Source: Obrimoposthia wandeli (lineage: Eukaryota). Taken from it: 64,000 nucleotides of DNA. Shown here in pieces: positions 56,984-64,000 of this stretch; within the stretch, counting starts at the first letter, position 1; each line of letters begins with the position of its first letter. Under the pieces are notes generated by a model that ran no database searches, was not told the DNA's origin, and worked only from the letters and a program-made list of their open reading frames with translations. A program made the translations under genes and the position numbers. The stretch spans positions 186,001 to 250,000 of the forward strand of contig CDROCS010003840.1 of assembly GCA_977020255.1 (NCBI GenBank), written 5' to 3'.

Positions 56984-58237
56984 TTATCCGACGGAAGGGA
57001 TGATTCCAATCATTTGTAATAATTGTGCAGAGATGATGAGTATACCGATACTTGTGACGGTAATTAATGCAGGTGTGCCTCCACGAACTTGGTAAGTCGC
57101 TGTTTTTATGCCTTTATCTACTGGCGTATGTATTTCTTTACCTACTGGCAGATTGTTTATTTGCTTACGCTGAGCTCGCACCATCGCAACAGGCAGAAAA
57201 ATAGCCAAAATAACCAGTGCTATCGCCGCATAGCCCAAGGCCATAATAAAGCCTTGTGGGTAGAATAGGGCAAAGCAAAGAGGTGGAACAAAGGTTACCA
57301 GCGCTGTTTGCATACGACCTTTTACTTGATTATCACGATTTAAAATATCAGAGATAAAATCAAATAAGCCTAAACTCACCCCCAAGAAAGAGGTTGCCAA
57401 GGCTAGGTCAGCAAATACTGATACAGATTGGCTAACGAGCGGGTTATGTAAAATATTGCTCAGTGTTGCTATAAACGAACCCAGTGTTGTACTTGCCATT
57501 AAATCGGGCTGACCAAGCACACCTTGACTTGCTACTTGCCATAATATGTAGACCATCAGTGGTGTTGCAGAGCCAATGACCATTATTTTTCGCAGTGCTT
57601 TAATATCCAAACCAACGTAACGAACAATGGAGGGAATGCTACCGTGAAAGCCAAAAGAGGTAAAAATGACGGGCAGTGCTGAAATGATTAATCCTTTTTG
57701 AATCGGCATCTCAACCAAATTAACAGCTTGAACATGTGGCATTAATAGAACAAACATAACGGCCAATGCAATAACTTTTAGCGTGAACAATACGCGATTA
57801 ACCATATCGACGGAATGTGTACCTATCGATACAACGGTTGCGATAATAACGGTAAATCCAACTGTACCCACTTGAGGTGCAAGACTTAGCCCCATCCAAT
57901 TCGTTAACTTGTCATTAAGTTGGCTGCCGCCACCGGCAATGTATGCCGCACATAATGCGTAAAATAGAAACATCATTGCGAAGCTGGCAATCACTTGACC
58001 TTTGCGACCTAATAATTGATGTGCCAGTGTGTGCAATGTTGCATTTTTATCGGCATGTTGGTGTACCTCTAGCATTAATAGAGCGGTATAAATCATTAAT
58101 GCCCAAATACCCACCATCGTTAATGTTGCTGCTGTGAACCCCAACCCTGCTGATGCGAGAGGGAGAGCTAGCATTCCTGCCCCAATTGTTGTGCCTGCGA
58201 TGATCAGCGTACTGCCGAAAGTTTTACTCATGCTCAT
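56984..58237 (-). CDS. tyrP: tyrosine-specific aromatic amino acid permease (HAAAP)
   Basis: GTTIGAGMLALP, TSFGFHGSIPS, ATSFLGV; TyrR boxes upstream. Confidence 0.9.
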   Translation of the reverse strand: MSMSKTFGSTLIIAGTTIGAGMLALPLASAGLGFTAATLTMVGIWALMIYTALLMLEVHQHADKNATLHTLAHQLLGRKGQVIASFAMMFLFYALCAAYIAGGGSQLNDKLTNWMGLSLAPQVGTVGFTVIIATVVSIGTHSVDMVNRVLFTLKVIALAVMFVLLMPHVQAVNLVEMPIQKGLIISALPVIFTSFGFHGSIPSIVRYVGLDIKALRKIMVIGSATPLMVYILWQVASQGVLGQPDLMASTTLGSFIATLSNILHNPLVSQSVSVFADLALATSFLGVSLGLFDFISDILNRDNQVKGRMQTALVTFVPPLCFALFYPQGFIMALGYAAIALVILAIFLPVAMVRAQRKQINNLPVGKEIHTPVDKGIKTATYQVRGGTPALITVTSIGILIISAQLLQMIGIIPSVG

Positions 58238-58263
58238 TGAAGTTATTGTTCCCAGTTATATTG

Positions 58264-58281
58264 TGTTCATAAAACTTTACA
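58264..58281. promoter_or_regulatory. weak TyrR box near tyrP start
   Basis: TGTTCA-N6-TTTACA versus TGTAAA-N6-TTTACA. Confidence 0.55.
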
Positions 58282-58451
58282 CTTAATCACGCGGTTGTGG
58301 CTATCGATAGTCAGTGTCGTAATGAAAGGTATTCACGTTTTTTACTCGTTTTTCAGTAGTAATGTGTAGGTATAAGGCAATTGACCTAACCTATATGCTG
58401 GGTAGTACCTTAATGCTAGTTTTCTTTACTGTCAACTTCTGATGGCTTGGC

Positions 58452-58469
58452 TGTAAATTTATATTTACA
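58452..58469. promoter_or_regulatory. strong TyrR box
   Basis: Perfect TGTAAA-TTTATA-TTTACA upstream of tyrP. Confidence 0.88.
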
Positions 58470-58618
58470 CTTTGATGGGGCGATATTTCCGATAAGAAAG
58501 ACTGAATTGATGGAGAAGAGTAACGCATTGATCTCTACTGCTTTAGTCAGAGAACAAATTCTCGCTGAAACGTGCATCTTAAGGTAACTTGGGTATATAA
58601 ATCGGATGACATACAAAG

Positions 58619-59854
58619 ATGAGGGAAGCCATGTTACACGTTGCGATGATTAGTACCGGAGAAGAAGTGCTGCACGGAGATATTGTGGATACTAATGCTG
58701 CGTGGTTATCGCGTCTATTTTTTGAACGTGGTTTCGCGTTATCTAGACGTACGACTGTCGGCGATCAACTTGAAGGTTTAGCGGCGGAAATTGAGCATTG
58801 TAGCCTAACCTCTGATGTGGTTATCGTAAATGGTGGGCTTGGGCCAACAAGTGACGACTTAACGGCTCAAGCTGCGGCTATTGCGGCTGATGTGGGTTTA
58901 GAGCAATCTGATTACTGGGTTGAACAGATGCGTGAAAAGTATCAAAAACTCAATCTCGTTATGCCACAGTCTAACTTGAAGCAGGCAATGCTACCCGAAG
59001 GTGCTGAGTTACTTGAAAATCCGATAGGTACAGCTTGTGGATTTGCGATGAAATTAAACCGCGCTTGGATCTTTTTTACGCCTGGTGTGCCAAGTGAATT
59101 TAAAAAAATGGCGCAAGAGCAAATATTAACGCGCTTAAAAGCCACATATACTGAAACGGAAAAGTTGGATTGCCATCGTTTCTATACCTTTGGTTTGTCA
59201 GAGTCAGGTATTGGCGATACTTTAGCGTCTGTTTCGCTGCCGAAAGGGTATGAGTTGGGTTATCGTTCGTCGTTGCCGTTTATTGAAGTGAAGCTGTTTG
59301 CACCAGCTGCCGATACCAATGCACTTGCTTTCCAGCAACAGATGATTGATTTACTGGGTGAGAATGTAGTGAGTATAGGTCAAACGCTTCCTGAGCATGT
59401 AGGTGCGCAATTGGTAGCGAAACAACTGACACTCGCTTTGGCGGAGCAATGCTCTGGGGGATGGCTGACTAATTGGTTGCAAGATTATCCCGATGCGAAA
59501 GCGCAATTACGCCAAGGGTGGGTGTTAGGGGCGGTAGAAACGGCAGAGTTAGCCGCTTCAGATCAATTGACGTCGACATTGGCGATGGCGACCGCATCGC
59601 GCGAAAAAACGATTTCAGATATCGCGCTGGTTTCAGGGCCGCTTTATGATGGAAAAGTGGCGGTGGCTATGGCGACCCCTAACGGTGATTGGGCACAAGT
59701 TATTTCGACCAAACGACAATATGGCTCACGAGATATGCGTAGTTTGATCGCAACGGTGATGTTGGACATGCTACGCCGTTGGTTGGTTGGACAACCTGTG
59801 ATGGGGCAATTTAGCTCGCTGAATCGCGAAAGTGAGATATTCTTAACGAGCTGA
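58619..59854 (+). CDS. CinA/YfaY-family protein (MoCF-like N-domain + degenerate PncC domain)
   Basis: GEEVLHGDIVDTNA, GGLGPTSDDLT, NPIGTACG, PGVPSE; C-terminal AEQCSGG. Confidence 0.88.
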   Translation: MREAMLHVAMISTGEEVLHGDIVDTNAAWLSRLFFERGFALSRRTTVGDQLEGLAAEIEHCSLTSDVVIVNGGLGPTSDDLTAQAAAIAADVGLEQSDYWVEQMREKYQKLNLVMPQSNLKQAMLPEGAELLENPIGTACGFAMKLNRAWIFFTPGVPSEFKKMAQEQILTRLKATYTETEKLDCHRFYTFGLSESGIGDTLASVSLPKGYELGYRSSLPFIEVKLFAPAADTNALAFQQQMIDLLGENVVSIGQTLPEHVGAQLVAKQLTLALAEQCSGGWLTNWLQDYPDAKAQLRQGWVLGAVETAELAASDQLTSTLAMATASREKTISDIALVSGPLYDGKVAVAMATPNGDWAQVISTKRQYGSRDMRSLIATVMLDMLRRWLVGQPVMGQFSSLNRESEIFLTS

Positions 59855-59896
59855 TTTCACGAAGGGAGCAGCACCTGCATATTAATGAGATAGCGA

Positions 59897-59927
59897 AAGA
59901 AAGTGCAGTTAGTCTGCACTTTCTTTT
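59897..59927 (+). terminator. intrinsic terminator
   Basis: AAAGAAAGTGCAG-TTAGT-CTGCACTTTCTTT. Confidence 0.8.
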
Positions 59928-60490
59928 AGTGCTCAGTGTCTATGCTAGTTTAACGTGCATATTCATCTTCTGCTAAATATAGAGTCATTACCTTCGATGG
60001 GTTTTTTAACAAAGAATAAATTAAAGTGCGCGGTAAATATACGTGGTCATTAATAAGTGTATTTATTAAAATAATCACTTGTACAAATAAAAGCGTAGAG
60101 TTAATAGCTGATTTCGTTTTCGTTGGTATATGTGAAATAATTATAGCCTTGATGTAATTAAAGGAGGTTGTATTAGGGTTAAATAAAAGTATTCAATATT
60201 AATTATTAAAAAGGAATATTAATTTCAGATTTCAAGTAAATGGTAAGATATTTCAATTAGCCTAAAATATAAAATAAAAGCGTAGGTGTTGTCATACTAT
60301 TGTCAAATTATGAGTATTTCATTACAGACATTGTAAACAGTGTTTTTTTGGTACAAAGTTAATGTTTACAGGATCTCACACTACTGTGTTGATTGTGGAG
60401 GTTGGTTGTATATAGCCACATGCTATTGTTACTCCATAATGCTTGTCTAATAAAAAGCACCCAGCCGATTGATGATAAAGGAAAGACTTT

Positions 60491-61345
60491 ATGACATTCA
60501 AAATGAAAAAGATTGCCCTTGCAACGTCAGTAGTAGTGTCAGTATTGATGCTGCAAGCGTGTAACGATGCACCAGAGTCTACGCAGGTGTCATCAGATGC
60601 CCTTCTTGTTGAAGCACCAGCCACTGAAGCTGAAATGAAATCACTAGATGTTAATGTTATCTACCTTGATCGCCGCATGCTGCCGCCAGGGGCTGTGCTA
60701 GAAGTGACCCTTGAAGATGTATCAAAAGCCGATGCGCCGTCAGAGCTGATTGTTAGCCAGTCAATGGAGCCTGCGTCTGCGCCTCCATACGCGATGGTAT
60801 TGGATTACGATACGACCAAAATTGTAGATAAGCACCGTTATAGCCTACGTGCCACGGTTAAAGTACAAGATCAGTTGGTGATGACATCAACCACCAGTAT
60901 TGACCCATTTGCTGAAGGGGCGATTGTACCCGTTGAAATTAAATTGGATCGGGTTGCACAAACCGAAATTCAAGCCACAGATACAACACATAATGCCGCT
61001 TTCACAGATACTTACTGGACGTTAATGCAGCTAGGCGGTCAAGAAGCCAAATTGGGTGCAGCAGAAAAAGAAGTGTTTATCCAGTTTGCATCTGACGGTA
61101 ATGCAGCGCACGGTTTCTCGGGATGTAATACGTTTAAAGGTGGCTTTGAAATAGACCAAGGCAAACTAAGTATGGGTCCTGTTGCGGCAACACAGATGAT
61201 GTGTGCAGGCGGTATGGATCAAGAACACGCATTCTTGAGTGCGATGGGGCAATTTGCTAGCTACAGTGTGCAAGGTGAAGCGCTGACGGTGAAAAATAAC
61301 CAAGGTGAAGTGGTTGCCACGTTCGAGTCTCGTGACATGAACTAA
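60491..61345 (+). CDS. lipoprotein with YbaY-like and META (HslJ) domains
   Basis: Lipobox LQAC; YLDRRMLPPGAVLEVTLEDVS; GFSGCNTFKG...ATQMMC. Confidence 0.85.
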   Translation: MTFKMKKIALATSVVVSVLMLQACNDAPESTQVSSDALLVEAPATEAEMKSLDVNVIYLDRRMLPPGAVLEVTLEDVSKADAPSELIVSQSMEPASAPPYAMVLDYDTTKIVDKHRYSLRATVKVQDQLVMTSTTSIDPFAEGAIVPVEIKLDRVAQTEIQATDTTHNAAFTDTYWTLMQLGGQEAKLGAAEKEVFIQFASDGNAAHGFSGCNTFKGGFEIDQGKLSMGPVAATQMMCAGGMDQEHAFLSAMGQFASYSVQGEALTVKNNQGEVVATFESRDMN

Positions 61346-61476
61346 TATCAATCTAGACAAGTATCTGATAGCAACACGGTTATGAGGATCGTGAGGTTGT
61401 CAGATTTTTGCTTATATAGAAAGGTATAAGTACAGAAGTACGGTAATGCTGGTGGTGTGAACGAATAGGGTGGCGG

Positions 61477-61764
61477 TTACATTGCTTCTTTGGCTGCGAT
61501 GTATGTTAATTGGTAATCAAATTCGATGTCGATATTAGCCTTGGGGATTGAACGACAGGCTAGAATTTCGTTTGAACCGACAAAAGCCATCGCATCTTGT
61601 TGGTCAACTGCCCCTGACTTTAATTTACAGCGACACGCACCGCACATGCCGTTACGGCATTGATACTCAGGTTGAATACCGGCACTTTCTAATTGGGTAA
61701 GCAAAGATTCACGGCTATTGCCGTGAACCTCTTGACCGTTAACCTTTATGGTTAGTCGGCTCAT
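61477..61764 (-). CDS. yfaE: class I RNR maintenance 2Fe-2S ferredoxin
   Basis: [11 protein letters not shown]...EILAC; ATG overlaps the nrdB stop. Confidence 0.88.
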
Positions 61765-62306
61765 AGCTCGAAGTCACCGAGATCGTCTGCACTTACATCG
61801 TTGTCGATTTGACCAACAAGGTAAGAGCTGATTTCAGCTTCTTGTGGAGCAACCTGTACATTATCAGAAGATAACCATGAGTTAATCCATGGAATTGGGT
61901 TCTGATTAGCACCAAGATAAGCATGATCAAGACCTACCGCTTTCATACGTAGGTTTGTGATGTATTCAACGTACTGGCAAAGACTTTCTTTGTTAAGGCC
62001 GATCATTGAACCATCTTTGAATAGGTATTTTGCCCATTCTTTTTCTTGTTCTGCGGCTTCTTTGAAAATGTCAAAGCAATCTTGTTGGCATTCTTGCGCA
62101 ATGTCAGCCATTTCAGGATCATCGTGTCGACCACGAAGAAGGTTCAGAATGTGTTGAGTACCCGTTAGATGAAGGGCTTCATCACGGGCAATTAGCTTGA
62201 TGATTTTCGCATTACCTTCCATTAATTCACGCTCGGCAAATGCAAATGAACATGCAAAGCTGACGTAGAAACGGATAGCCTCAAGTGCATTAACTGACAT
62301 CATACA
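61761..62306 (-). pseudogene. nrdB: 3' half (181 codons) of class Ia ribonucleotide reductase beta subunit; 5' half absent
   Basis: [37 protein letters not shown]; NrdB similarity stops at 62306. Confidence 0.92.
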
Positions 62307-62774
62307 TGTGGGTTTATCGTAGGAATGAATATATGGTAAAGCCGGTTGTAATCTACGATTACCAACCAAGCCGAGCACGTAGCTGTCCAAAAACATTTTA
62401 ACCGGGTACGCAGGTTACTTACAGAGTGATGGTTACAGTGCTTATGAAAATGTCGACAATATAATTCCTGTTGGTTGCTGGGCACATGCAAGGCGTAAGT
62501 TTCACTATGCCTTAACCGCACAGCCAAAAAAACGGGTACGGGTAAAGCCACGGTCGCCATCAATCACATCCAATCACTTTATGCGATAGAGAAAAAAGCC
62601 AAATCATTAACGCCTGAAGAACGGCAACAATGACGCGTTAAAAAAGCAGAACCCGTCTTGCTCCAATTTCATGAATGGTTGGTTAAAAGTGCAGAAACAG
62701 TCACGCCAAAAAGTAAAATAGGCGTGGCGATTTTATATACCTTAAATCAATGGGAAAAGCTGAGGCGCTATCTT
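62300..62774 (+). mobile_element. internal fragment of IS66-family transposase (TnpC), with frameshifts and a stop, no terminal IR seen
   Basis: Hand translation: SYMWVY...[49 protein letters not shown]. Confidence 0.9.
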
Positions 62775-63186
62775 TATTGGCAGATGCAAAAACCGGAGCC
62801 CTCATTATTACAGCAGGTCTCAATTTACTGACAAACAAAGGTATTTATCAATGCTGAAGTTTAGAGTTGCCCCTCAACAAAGTCATTTAGGTTCACTATT
62901 AGATAGTATTCGTTGGCAAGAGTAATTAAAGTTAGACAAGTCTTTGGTGCCTGTTGTTGATGGAGAAGTAGATTCAGTAAAAAAATCGGAGCCATTTAGA
63001 CTCAGTTTACGCGCTAACTCGAACTATAGCAGGCTCAACGTTCCGTCACTAAGGTAAAGAAGGCTATCTATTTGTTGGGGAAACGACCGTTGAGTTACAT
63101 CGGAGATCTGAAAAGCTTGCTTCAGCACCCACTTGTCGCTTTGTTATGAGCTTAGTCACGGATGACAAAGACAAATAGTTAGCAGG

Positions 63187-64000
63187 ATGGTGTTACTTAT
63201 TAATAACGGATTAATTACCATGCAAACAATTACCAGACCTATTGTTAGTGATGCATTATTAACGTCACTAAAGTCTATTTGGTCAATAGATGAAGAGCAG
63301 ATATACACAAAACTAAAAGAATTGGATTTAGAGCTAAAAATAAGTGATAAAATAATATGTGTTGATGAGGGTGATACAAATAAAAAAATGATCTTCTTTT
63401 TTTTTGGGATAGAACTCTGAATTTTATAGATTGGTGTACTTACAATCATATAGAGCATTATTATGATTTTTTTGAAGGTAGAGTATTCCATGAAAAAGAG
63501 CAGGATTATATTGAATACATTCTCGTATCAAAATACATGTTGTATAAACTACTCCGTAGTCACCCTGCGAGCATAGATGACATACTAAGGTGGAATAAAA
63601 AATCATCTGTTAATGATTTTATTATTAATGAAACAATAAAATTGTTTGTTAAAAATCCCCCATCAGAAAATGTAGCATTGTCATTACCGACGAGAAAATA
63701 TCAAGGGTATTGTAATCAGGCCTTCATTGCATTTATTGTTGGGTACGATGAATCTCATCTCTGTTGTAGTGGATGGCAAGCATCGAAAAGTATAGGTAAC
63801 CCTTCAAAGGAACCTTTGAAGGAGATATGGAATAGCGAGCAGGCGAAAGCATTTAGAAAGTCTATCATTGACGGCTCTTATCGGTACTGTTTAGATGATA
63901 CTTGCCCATTCTTAAGCTCAGATAATAATAACTTCCCTAGATTAGAACAATATCCGACCTCTATTCAAAATGATATCATTCGTGGTGACGGTGTCATGTC
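63187..64000 (+). CDS. SPASM-like Fe-S domain protein (probably radical SAM-associated), apparently frameshifted at 63382-63405 and truncated by window end
   Basis: Frame 63187-63420 plus a second frame open from 63384 to the end: YCNQAF...HLCCSGW...IGN...LKEIWNSEQAKAFRKSIIDGSYRYCLDDTCP. Confidence 0.68.

What the first reader, a model, noticed from the sequence alone, without database searches (positions are those of the whole stretch)
62290..62320. Half of nrdB welded to the middle of an IS66 transposase through a 7-bp microhomology
Seen: minus-strand NrdB similarity ends at TGT-ATG-ATG-TCA (CMMS). On the plus strand the same bases read TCA-TAC-ATG-TGG (SYMW, an IS66 TnpC motif), so both share TCATACA (62300-62306). 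Both genes lack their 5' halves and no IS end is present. Established: NrdB is needed for aerobic dNTP synthesis; the fragment keeps E204, E238/H241 and Y356 but lacks D84, E115, H118 and Y122 (E. coli numbering). The yfaE/CinA/tyrP neighbours resemble the native Vibrionaceae nrdAB locus. Inference: this is an illegitimate-recombination scar, not a transposition. Either the native RNR operon was broken and the cell relies on a relocated or island-borne copy or another RNR class, or this is an assembly chimera.
Basis: partly seen in the sequence, partly recalled or inferred. Interest (0 to 1): 0.75.

Follow-up and report, generated by a model that had tools for sequence, protein, structure and literature searches.

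The report
Leftover nrdB half beside inserted island
The half nrdB gene joined to a dead IS66 fragment is real, but it is only a spare partial copy left at one edge of a 13-kb inserted gene island, and the bacterium's working ribonucleotide reductase operon sits intact at the island's other edge, so this is an ordinary insertion scar.

Summary
NrdB similarity on the minus strand ends at window 62306. IS66 TnpC similarity on the plus strand starts at 62299/62300. Both genes are internal fragments and no IS end is present.

The main inference does not hold. The window is part of a 373-kb Photobacterium contig (P. profundum/indicum clade) inside a 1.35-Gb mixed assembly. On that contig, 13 kb to the right, lies an intact nrdA-nrdB-yfaE' operon with every NrdB metal ligand and Y122.

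The fragment, together with a full yfaE, is the left arm (61510-62306) of a 797-bp direct repeat. The repeat is 94.6% identical with no gaps. The arms differ mostly by synonymous changes (dS 0.24, dN/dS 0.08). They flank a 13,008-bp island that carries IS debris and a microcin-like maturation and export cluster, and no integrase domain was found in it. 66 of 67 other Photobacterium species carry the 797 bp once (one gave no match) and none twice; in the closest, P. indicum, both arms map to one uninterrupted interval.

The layout is what a single-crossover (Campbell-type) integration of a circularised foreign DNA carrying a partial nrdB-yfaE segment produces. On that reading the 62306 joint is the circle's illegitimate closure. 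Only 4 bp of microhomology (TACA) are certain; 7 bp is possible.

No laid contig was shown to bridge 62306, so read support is incomplete. An earlier scan note (s1-208661) had flagged the two nrdB halves.

The parts
56984..61345 (.). Native downstream flank of the nrdAB-yfaE locus: Trp/Tyr permease (56984-58237, minus), CinA-like gene (58619-59854, plus), META/YscW-domain lipoprotein gene (60491-61345, plus)
   Evidence: Pfam domains. Collinear with the region downstream of yfaE in P. indicum at 79-93% nt identity.
61477..61764 (-). Full-length yfaE (95 aa, 2Fe-2S ferredoxin), left copy with the native C-terminus
   Evidence: Pfam Fer2, E 5e-13. Its last 11 codons and downstream DNA match P. 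indicum.
61510..62306 (.). Left arm of a 797-bp direct repeat. The right arm is contig C3840:261315-262111 (L011:4315-5111), 13,805 bp further on.
   Evidence: blastn gives 94.6% identity, 43 mismatches and no gaps. Both arms map to one interval in P. indicum. 66 of 67 other Photobacterium species hold it once, one gave no match, and none holds it twice.
61761..62306 (-). nrdB' fragment: the 3' 181 codons of class Ia NrdB (from Cys196, E. coli numbering) with no stop or frameshift. It lies inside a 211-codon ORF that starts at an ATG at 62396, antisense to the IS66 remnant.
   Evidence: Pfam PF00268 positions 150-281 only. Against the intact copy: 23 synonymous and 8 non-synonymous differences, dN/dS 0.08.
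62300..62306 (.). Illegitimate joint with 4-7 bp of overlap (TACA certain, TCATACA possible)
   Evidence: nrdB homology ends at 62306. IS66 homology begins at 62299/62300. Intact IS66 relatives read TCC/TCT-TACATGTGGG.
62300..62778 (+). Internal remnant of an IS66-family tnpC transposase gene, truncated at both ends, with frameshifts and one stop
   Evidence: Pfam PF03050 positions 90-248 of 284, spread over three frames. A related intact copy in run X23 continues past 62778 as ...GELGIDNNV. The remnant is unique in the assembly.
62307..64000 (.). Start of the 13,008-bp island. It runs on to contig C3840:261314, which corresponds to window position 75314.
   Evidence: Island genes by Pfam: radical-SAM/SPASM protein, IS1595 transposase, second IS66 fragment, C39-peptidase ABC exporter, HlyD, GT2 glycosyltransferase, a 460-aa protein with no Pfam match, HlyC-like acyltransferase, an HTH protein, and a truncated IS630-like transposase. 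No integrase domain. GC is 41.1%, the same as the flanks.

Best explanation
The junction at 62300-62306 is the left edge of a 13-kb island inserted into the nrdB-yfaE end of the native class Ia RNR operon of a Photobacterium. The island sits between two diverged direct copies of a 797-bp nrdB'-yfaE' segment.

In operon direction, the upstream copy completes an intact nrdA-nrdB and ends 12 codons short of the yfaE stop. The downstream copy starts at nrdB codon 196 and runs through a complete yfaE into the native downstream genes.

This is the product expected when a circular DNA carrying an internal piece of nrdB-yfaE from a related lineage integrates by one homologous crossover (Campbell-type). 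One repeat copy ends up cut at its 3' end and the other at its 5' end, and the operon stays functional.

On this reading the IS66'|nrdB' joint is the illegitimate, microhomology-assisted closure of that circle, not a transposition and not a break in the resident gene.

Shown: the repeat, the intact operon, the island content, the divergence pattern and the single-copy state in relatives. Inferred: the circular intermediate, the direction of transfer and which arm is foreign.
For: - Repeat: 797 bp at 94.6% identity with no gaps, ending exactly at 62306 and at 61510-61513.
- Intact operon: nrdB has D84, E115, H118, Y122, E204, E238 and H241 and matches solved NrdB chains end to end. NrdA is complete.
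- Native genes lie on both outer flanks, and both arms map to a single uninterrupted interval in P. indicum. 66 of 67 other Photobacterium species and 148 of 149 matching sampled Vibrionaceae genomes give one match; the one double is a different, tandem duplication.
- The arms diverged under purifying selection: nrdB half dS 0.24, dN/dS 0.08; yfaE part 11 synonymous and 0 non-synonymous changes; no indel or stop in the fragment. The two copies therefore evolved as working genes in separate lineages and the truncation is recent.
- Differences reach to 11 bp from the nrdB end of the arm, too close for that end to have been overwritten later by homologous exchange.
- No integrase or recombinase domain in the island.
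- Experimental precedent, PMC3240628: homology-facilitated illegitimate recombination generally gives an insertion coupled with a deletion. Duplications of 109-950 bp of the homologous segment arose from a single crossover of a recircularised, partly degraded molecule.
- Arm-specific changes are unevenly spread between the yfaE and nrdB parts (Fisher p 0.024). This fits a crossover inside the arm, but weakly.
- The island core occurs in three other Photobacterium species at 71-76% nt identity, away from nrdB, so it is mobile cargo.
Against: - No circular form, donor genome or sister strain without the island was found, so the direction of transfer and which arm is foreign are unknown.
- P. indicum and three other clade species are equally distant (about 94%) from both arms.
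- No listed Logan contig bridges 62306.
- The junction 37-mer is absent from JGI metagenome contigs.
- The evidence for a crossover inside the arm is weak: a simple runs count by hand on the site list was not significant (about 12 runs against 14.5 expected).
- A one-ended homologous event with an illegitimate join made in the recipient could give the same map.
Confidence: 0.6

Rival explanations
1. Homology-facilitated illegitimate recombination of linear DNA. The donor's nrdB-yfaE end recombined homologously, and the far IS66 end was joined through the TACA/TCATACA microhomology directly to the recipient's nrdB. The join fell upstream of the anchor, so a duplication arose instead of the usual deletion.
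For: One homologous side and one joint with 4-7 bp of microhomology, within the 3-10 bp range reported for HFIR.
Against: In the literature read, HFIR products generally carry a deletion of recipient DNA. Duplications were attributed to single crossover of circles (PMC3240628). The uneven spread of arm-specific changes fits a crossover inside the arm slightly better than a wholly recipient left arm.
Confidence: 0.17
2. In-situ origin. The structure first formed with identical arms inside one genome. Later, a homologous import from a related species overwrote the right arm together with nrdB and nrdA, producing the 5.4% divergence.
For: Recombination imports are common in Vibrionaceae (general knowledge, not tested here). 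The first certain difference at the yfaE end of the arm lies 45 bp inside it, enough room for a crossover there.
Against: It needs two events, and an import ending within 45 bp of the arm boundary. It still needs the same illegitimate joint. No discontinuity in divergence is seen between the right arm and the adjoining nrdB 5' half or nrdA.
Confidence: 0.08
3. Site-specific integrative island that targets nrdB and brings a replacement 3' half plus yfaE, in the way prophage e14 does at icd. Its integrase has been lost or acts in trans. This is the reading of scan note s1-208661.
For: The essential gene is kept intact by an island-side 3' half, and the displaced native 3' half remains as a fragment.
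Against: No integrase or recombinase domain in any island ORF. The island edge at the joint is the middle of a decayed transposase gene, not an att-like site. No second case was found: none of the 66 other Photobacterium species that matched holds the 797 bp twice, and the sample of 151 Vibrionaceae genomes gave no flanked partial copy. The island core lies elsewhere in the three species that have it. 797 bp is far longer than known att duplications (general knowledge).
Confidence: 0.06
4. Assembly chimera joining different strains or loci of a mixed sample.
For: The assembly is a 1.35-Gb mixture with many bacteria. Run X23 holds a second, about 97.6% identical strain over 59800-60769. No listed contig bridges 62306, and only 82% of the sampled words of window 61400-63400 are held by X23.
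Against: The joint shares only 4-7 bp, and neither side is repeated elsewhere in the assembly. The right-hand junction and the continuation of the intact nrdB are reproduced as loose ends by X23 contigs, although X23 is likely the window's own sample. A left-arm-specific contig (61866-62145) has 0 differences. No alternative continuation is reported at 62306/62307.
Confidence: 0.05
5. One reading: the native RNR operon was destroyed and the cell depends on another copy or another RNR class.
For: Within the 64-kb window only the half gene is visible.
Against: Intact nrdA-nrdB-yfaE' lies 13 kb beyond on the same contig, in native context.
Confidence: 0.02

Closest known systems
Single-crossover (Campbell-type) integration of a circular molecule carrying an internal gene fragment, as in suicide-plasmid integrants and the lacZ-end duplications of 109-950 bp described in PMC3240628
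   Same: A direct duplication of the homology segment flanks the insert. One copy is cut at its 3' end and the other at its 5' end. The duplication size (797 bp) lies within the reported range. The illegitimate closure joint sits at one inner boundary.
   Different: This is a natural event in a marine Photobacterium. The arms are 5.4% diverged, so the homology came from another lineage. The insert is a 13-kb IS-littered microcin-like island, not a plasmid. No circular form has been seen.
Homology-facilitated illegitimate recombination (HFIR) in Acinetobacter baylyi, Streptococcus pneumoniae and Pseudomonas stutzeri
   Same: Foreign DNA is anchored by one homologous stretch, and the other end is joined at a short microhomology (3-10 bp reported; 4-7 bp here).
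   Different: HFIR generally deletes recipient DNA. Here 797 bp are duplicated and nothing is missing from the locus.
Prophage e14 at icd and other islands that integrate into a gene's 3' end and supply a replacement end
   Same: The target gene stays intact and a displaced 3' fragment is left at the far edge of the island.
   Different: No integrase was found. The joint lies in the middle of a dead IS66 transposase gene. The duplication is about 800 bp. The event is not recurrent in the relatives searched.
IS66-family insertion
   Same: The DNA next to the joint derives from an IS66 tnpC gene.
   Different: No IS66 end, no tnpA or tnpB and no target-site duplication. The fragment is internal and decayed, so the joint is not a transposition product.

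Membership tests
Class Ia ribonucleotide reductase beta subunit (NrdB), functional gene: left fragment 61761-62306 | Full ferritin-like domain (Pfam PF00268, positions about 1-281) | tested here: not met
   Only profile positions 150-281 are matched.
Class Ia ribonucleotide reductase beta subunit (NrdB), functional gene: left fragment 61761-62306 | Six di-iron ligands (D84, E115, H118, E204, E238, H241) and radical tyrosine Y122 | tested here: not met
   The fragment starts at C196. It keeps E204, E238 and H241 and lacks D84, E115, H118 and Y122.
Class Ia NrdB: right copy (L011:4566-5702, minus strand) | Full length, all ligands and Y122, C-terminal tail, adjacent nrdA | tested here: met
   378 aa. 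Matches solved NrdB chains over their whole length, E about 1e-210. All seven residues are present. NrdA (761 aa) has ATP-cone, lgN and lgC domains.
IS66-family insertion sequence | Complete TnpC DDE transposase in one frame | tested here: not met
   PF03050 positions 90-248 of 284, in three frames with one stop.
IS66-family insertion sequence | tnpA and tnpB accessory genes upstream, terminal inverted repeats and a target duplication | tested here: not met
   nrdB' lies directly upstream. Intact relatives have two accessory genes (both annotated tnpB in one record; one tnpB and one hypothetical in the other) before the transposase. The remnant breaks again at 62778. Inverted repeats were scanned only around the IS630-like end of the island; the IS66 remnant was not scanned.
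Campbell-type single-crossover integrant | Direct repeat of the homology segment flanking the insert, with complementary truncations of the two copies | tested here: met
   797-bp arms. The right arm is joined to the nrdB 5' half and nrdA and lacks the last 12 yfaE codons. The left arm lacks nrdB codons 1-195 and has the full yfaE.
Campbell-type single-crossover integrant | Circular intermediate carrying the fragment | not testable with these tools
   The one read-laying run returned only short Logan contigs.
HFIR product | Short microhomology at the illegitimate joint | tested here: met
   4 bp certain, up to 7 bp. Chance of at least 4 bp is about 0.016.
HFIR product | Insertion coupled with deletion of recipient DNA | tested here: not met
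   Nothing is missing relative to P. indicum; 797 bp are duplicated.
Integrase-driven genomic island with a replacement gene end | Tyrosine or serine recombinase gene in the island | tested here: not met
   Pfam scans of the island ORFs show transposases only.
Integrase-driven genomic island with a replacement gene end | Recurrent use of the same site in related genomes | tested here: not met
   None of the 66 other Photobacterium species that matched holds the 797 bp twice. 148 of the 149 sampled Vibrionaceae genomes with a match have one; the single double is a tandem full-length duplication.

The most novel reading that the evidence does not exclude
The 211-codon ORF (62396 to 61761, minus strand) is expressed as a truncated NrdB that keeps the C-terminal tail by which the beta subunit binds NrdA. 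It would then act as a competitor or modulator of RNR assembly, or drive expression of the full-length yfaE copy, so that the scar has a physiological effect and is not inert. Peptides copying the beta subunit's C-terminus are known RNR inhibitors (general knowledge, not tested here).
Probability: 0.03. Interest if true: 0.55.

Novelty: new member of a known kind. Interest (0 to 1): 0.2.

Why it matters
The result removes a false alarm: an essential operon that looks broken within the window is intact just outside it. It also documents a clean natural footprint of foreign DNA entering a chromosome through a short diverged homology plus one illegitimate joint. That route is well studied in the laboratory but rarely resolved to the base in environmental genomes. 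The arms share identical runs of up to 80 bp, so the island could in principle be lost again by recombination between them. It delivered a microcin-like maturation and export cluster next to an essential operon.

Tried and rejected
- Exact-protein look-ups of the intact NrdB and of the left YfaE found no record, so no sister strain was available.
- The closest species representatives (P. indicum and three others) are all about 94% identical to both arms. Site-by-site polarisation could not tell which arm is resident. The unique-change rates of the single-copy flanks (1.4-2.5%) fall between those of the arms.
- The IS66 remnant, the IS630-like fragment, the 110 bp at the right inner boundary and 62779-63180 each occur only once in the 1.35-Gb assembly. 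No parental IS66 copy was available to fix the microhomology length. The best public relatives are only 64-70% identical.
- Two exact-match scans of JGI metagenome contigs, one for the junction 37-mer and one for a left-arm-specific 36-mer, found nothing.
It supports the right-hand junction and left-arm alleles but lists no contig bridging 62306.
- Promoter and terminator scans around both arms gave no more sites than shuffled sequence. By eye, no Shine-Dalgarno motif precedes the ATG at 62396.
- NrdD genes exist on many other contigs of the mixed assembly but none on this contig. They cannot be assigned to this organism, and the question is moot because nrdAB is intact.

Full report
**What is at the coordinates**

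The window is G000:C3840:186001-250000, part of a 372,849-bp contig inside a 1.35-Gb, 6,912-contig assembly that holds many different bacteria besides its host.

- On the minus strand, an ORF at 61761-62396 matches Pfam Ribonuc_red_sm over profile positions 150-281 only.
- A 95-aa 2Fe-2S ferredoxin gene (yfaE, 61477-61764) follows it.
- On the plus strand, pieces from 62300 to about 62778 match the IS66 transposase domain PF03050 at positions 90-248 of 284. They are spread over three reading frames and contain one in-frame stop.
- blastn against plasmid-borne IS66 elements begins at query base 30/31, which is window 62299/62300.

A family search of the whole assembly found a second, complete NrdB on the same contig at 261701-262603, 13 kb beyond the fragment. 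I fetched the DNA past the window's end. It shows, on the minus strand:

- yfaE' (95 aa, last 12 residues different from the left copy);
- nrdB (378 aa);
- nrdA (761 aa);
- a HAD-family hydrolase gene and a UbiG-like methyltransferase gene.

The 378-aa NrdB aligns end to end with solved E. coli-type NrdB structures (E about 1e-210). It carries D84, E115, H118, Y122, E204, E238 and H241. NrdA has the ATP-cone, all-alpha and barrel domains. The class Ia RNR operon is intact.

**The repeat**

- blastn of 61001-62600 against the extended contig gives a second match: 61510-62306 against contig 261315-262111. It is 797 bp, 94.6% identical, with 43 mismatches and no gap.
- The base-by-base comparison shows that homology ends exactly after 62306. 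Both copies read ...GACATCATACA, then the window continues TGTGGG and the intact gene continues AACGTA.
- At the other end, homology stops at 61510-61513, twelve codons before the yfaE stop.
- The half nrdB is thus the left arm of a direct repeat flanking a 13,008-bp insert. The insert has 41.1% GC, the same as both flanks.
- In operon direction, the upstream arm is continuous with the nrdB 5' half and nrdA but lacks the yfaE end. The downstream arm lacks nrdB codons 1-195 but has the full yfaE and the native downstream genes: a META-domain lipoprotein, CinA and a Trp/Tyr permease.

**Relatives**

- The closest public genome is Photobacterium indicum ATCC 19614 (NrdB 98% aa).
- Both arms map to the same single interval of that genome at 94.4% and 94.7%. 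Both outer flanks are collinear with it, so the site there is uninterrupted.
- Among 67 Photobacterium species representatives, 66 hold the 797 bp once, one gave no match, and none holds it twice. Four species of the profundum/indicum clade are about 94% identical and the rest are 82% or less.
- In a sample of 151 Vibrionaceae genomes, 148 of the 149 with a match have one. The exception (G161) has two full-length nrdB genes in tandem, which is a different phenomenon.

**How the arms differ**

- In the nrdB half there are 23 synonymous and 8 non-synonymous differences (dS 0.24, dN 0.019, dN/dS 0.08).
- In the shared yfaE part there are 11 synonymous and no non-synonymous differences.
- The fragment has no indel or stop.
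- Such divergence accumulates in working genes of separate lineages, not in a pseudogene drifting in place. One arm therefore came from another lineage about as distant as P. indicum, and the truncation is recent.
- The left arm carries five amino-acid states not seen in its closest relatives, against one for the right arm. This hints at slight relaxation but is not significant.
- Which arm is resident could not be decided. Both are equally far from the four clade species, and the unique-change rates of the single-copy flanks lie between those of the arms.
- Arm-specific changes are unevenly spread. The right arm is the more divergent in the yfaE part and the left arm in the nrdB part (Fisher p 0.024). 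This fits a crossover near the nrdB/yfaE boundary, but weakly.

**The island**

From left to right the island holds:

- the IS66 tnpC remnant;
- a radical-SAM/SPASM gene;
- an apparently intact IS1595-type transposase gene;
- a second IS66 fragment;
- a C39-peptidase ABC exporter;
- a HlyD-type protein;
- a 47-codon ORF;
- a GT2 glycosyltransferase;
- a 460-aa protein with no Pfam match;
- a HlyC-like acyltransferase;
- a small HTH protein;
- an IS630-like transposase gene cut after its HTH part, followed by about 100 bp of unassigned DNA up to the right arm.

No integrase or recombinase domain was found. The exporter-to-acyltransferase core is collinear at 71-76% nt identity in three other Photobacterium species, where it is not next to nrdB. 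Earlier notes of this scan treat this core as a microcin-like system (s1-208395, s1-208414, s1-208489). I confirmed only the Pfam domains.

**Mechanism**

A direct duplication of an internal gene segment flanking an insert, with one copy cut at its 3' end and the other at its 5' end, is the textbook product of a single homologous crossover between the chromosome and a circle carrying that segment.

The paper PMC3240628 gives a direct experimental parallel:

- Homology-facilitated illegitimate recombination generally gave insertions coupled with deletions and 3-10 bp microhomologies.
- Duplications of 109-950 bp of the homologous segment arose from single crossover of a recircularised, partly degraded molecule.

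By analogy, the IS66'|nrdB' joint at 62300-62306 is the closure joint of such a circle.

On the size of the microhomology:

- Two intact IS66 relatives read TCC-TAC-ATG-TGG and TCT-TAC-ATG-TGG at this point.
- Only TACA (4 bp) is certainly shared. 7 bp requires a TCA codon in the unknown parent.
- At least 4 bp has a chance probability of about 0.016.

Differences between the arms reach to 11 bp from the nrdB end. This argues against later overwriting of the left arm. Overwriting of the right arm remains possible, because the first certain difference at its yfaE end lies 45 bp inside.

**Is it an assembly artefact?**

One run pair of one sample (X23 and X24) holds the stretch. It is probably the source sample, so it is not independent material. 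Its Logan contigs give the following:

- a left-arm-specific piece, 61866-62145, with no difference;
- loose ends that reproduce the 30 bases left of the right arm and the continuation of the intact nrdB beyond 62306;
- no alternative continuation at 62306/62307;
- no listed contig bridging 62306.

The junction 37-mer is absent from JGI metagenome contigs. Neither side of the joint is repeated in the assembly, and assemblers do not join on 4-7 bp. I rate a chimera at about 5%.

**Verdict**

The reading as an illegitimate joint is supported. The inference of a broken RNR operon is refuted. The feature is a new instance of a known kind of event and is of modest interest.

Noticed in passing
L118:1520-6516 (G161:C4:1579019-1584015): One Vibrionaceae species representative carries nrdA followed by two full-length nrdB genes in tandem (375 and 377 aa, about 75-78% nt identity, spacing 1216 bp) and then yfaE. 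This is a diverged tandem duplication of the RNR beta subunit.
   Followed up: partly
window 62779-63190 and L011:2928-3107: Two short non-coding stretches of the island are multi-copy in other Photobacterium genomes. The first has at least 3 copies at 80-83% identity in G039. The second has up to 4 copies per genome at 88-89% in G039, G043 and G013. They look like ends of unidentified IS elements or MITEs. The first begins exactly where the IS66 remnant breaks (62778).
   Followed up: no
window 59800-60769: Run X23 contains a contig with 23 differences and one 1-base deletion over this stretch. A second, about 97.6% identical Photobacterium strain therefore coexists in the sample.
   Followed up: no
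whole assembly G000: The assembly holds about 29 NrdB and 15 NrdD matches on many contigs. Several have in-frame TGA codons only, which suggests bacteria that read TGA as a sense codon. It is a host plus a rich bacterial community, not one genome.
   Followed up: no
L011:853-2232 (minus strand), contig C3840:257853-259232: A 460-aa island protein has no Pfam match. It is conserved with its neighbours in three other Photobacterium species. An earlier scan note calls it SelO-like.
   Followed up: no
window 63187-64000, continuing to L009:3736: The radical-SAM/SPASM gene seems split near an A/T homopolymer tract around 63390-63402: a 77-codon ORF is followed by a 399-codon ORF in another frame. 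Only the 399-aa part matched Pfam (SPASM, with a weak Radical_SAM hit).
   Followed up: partly
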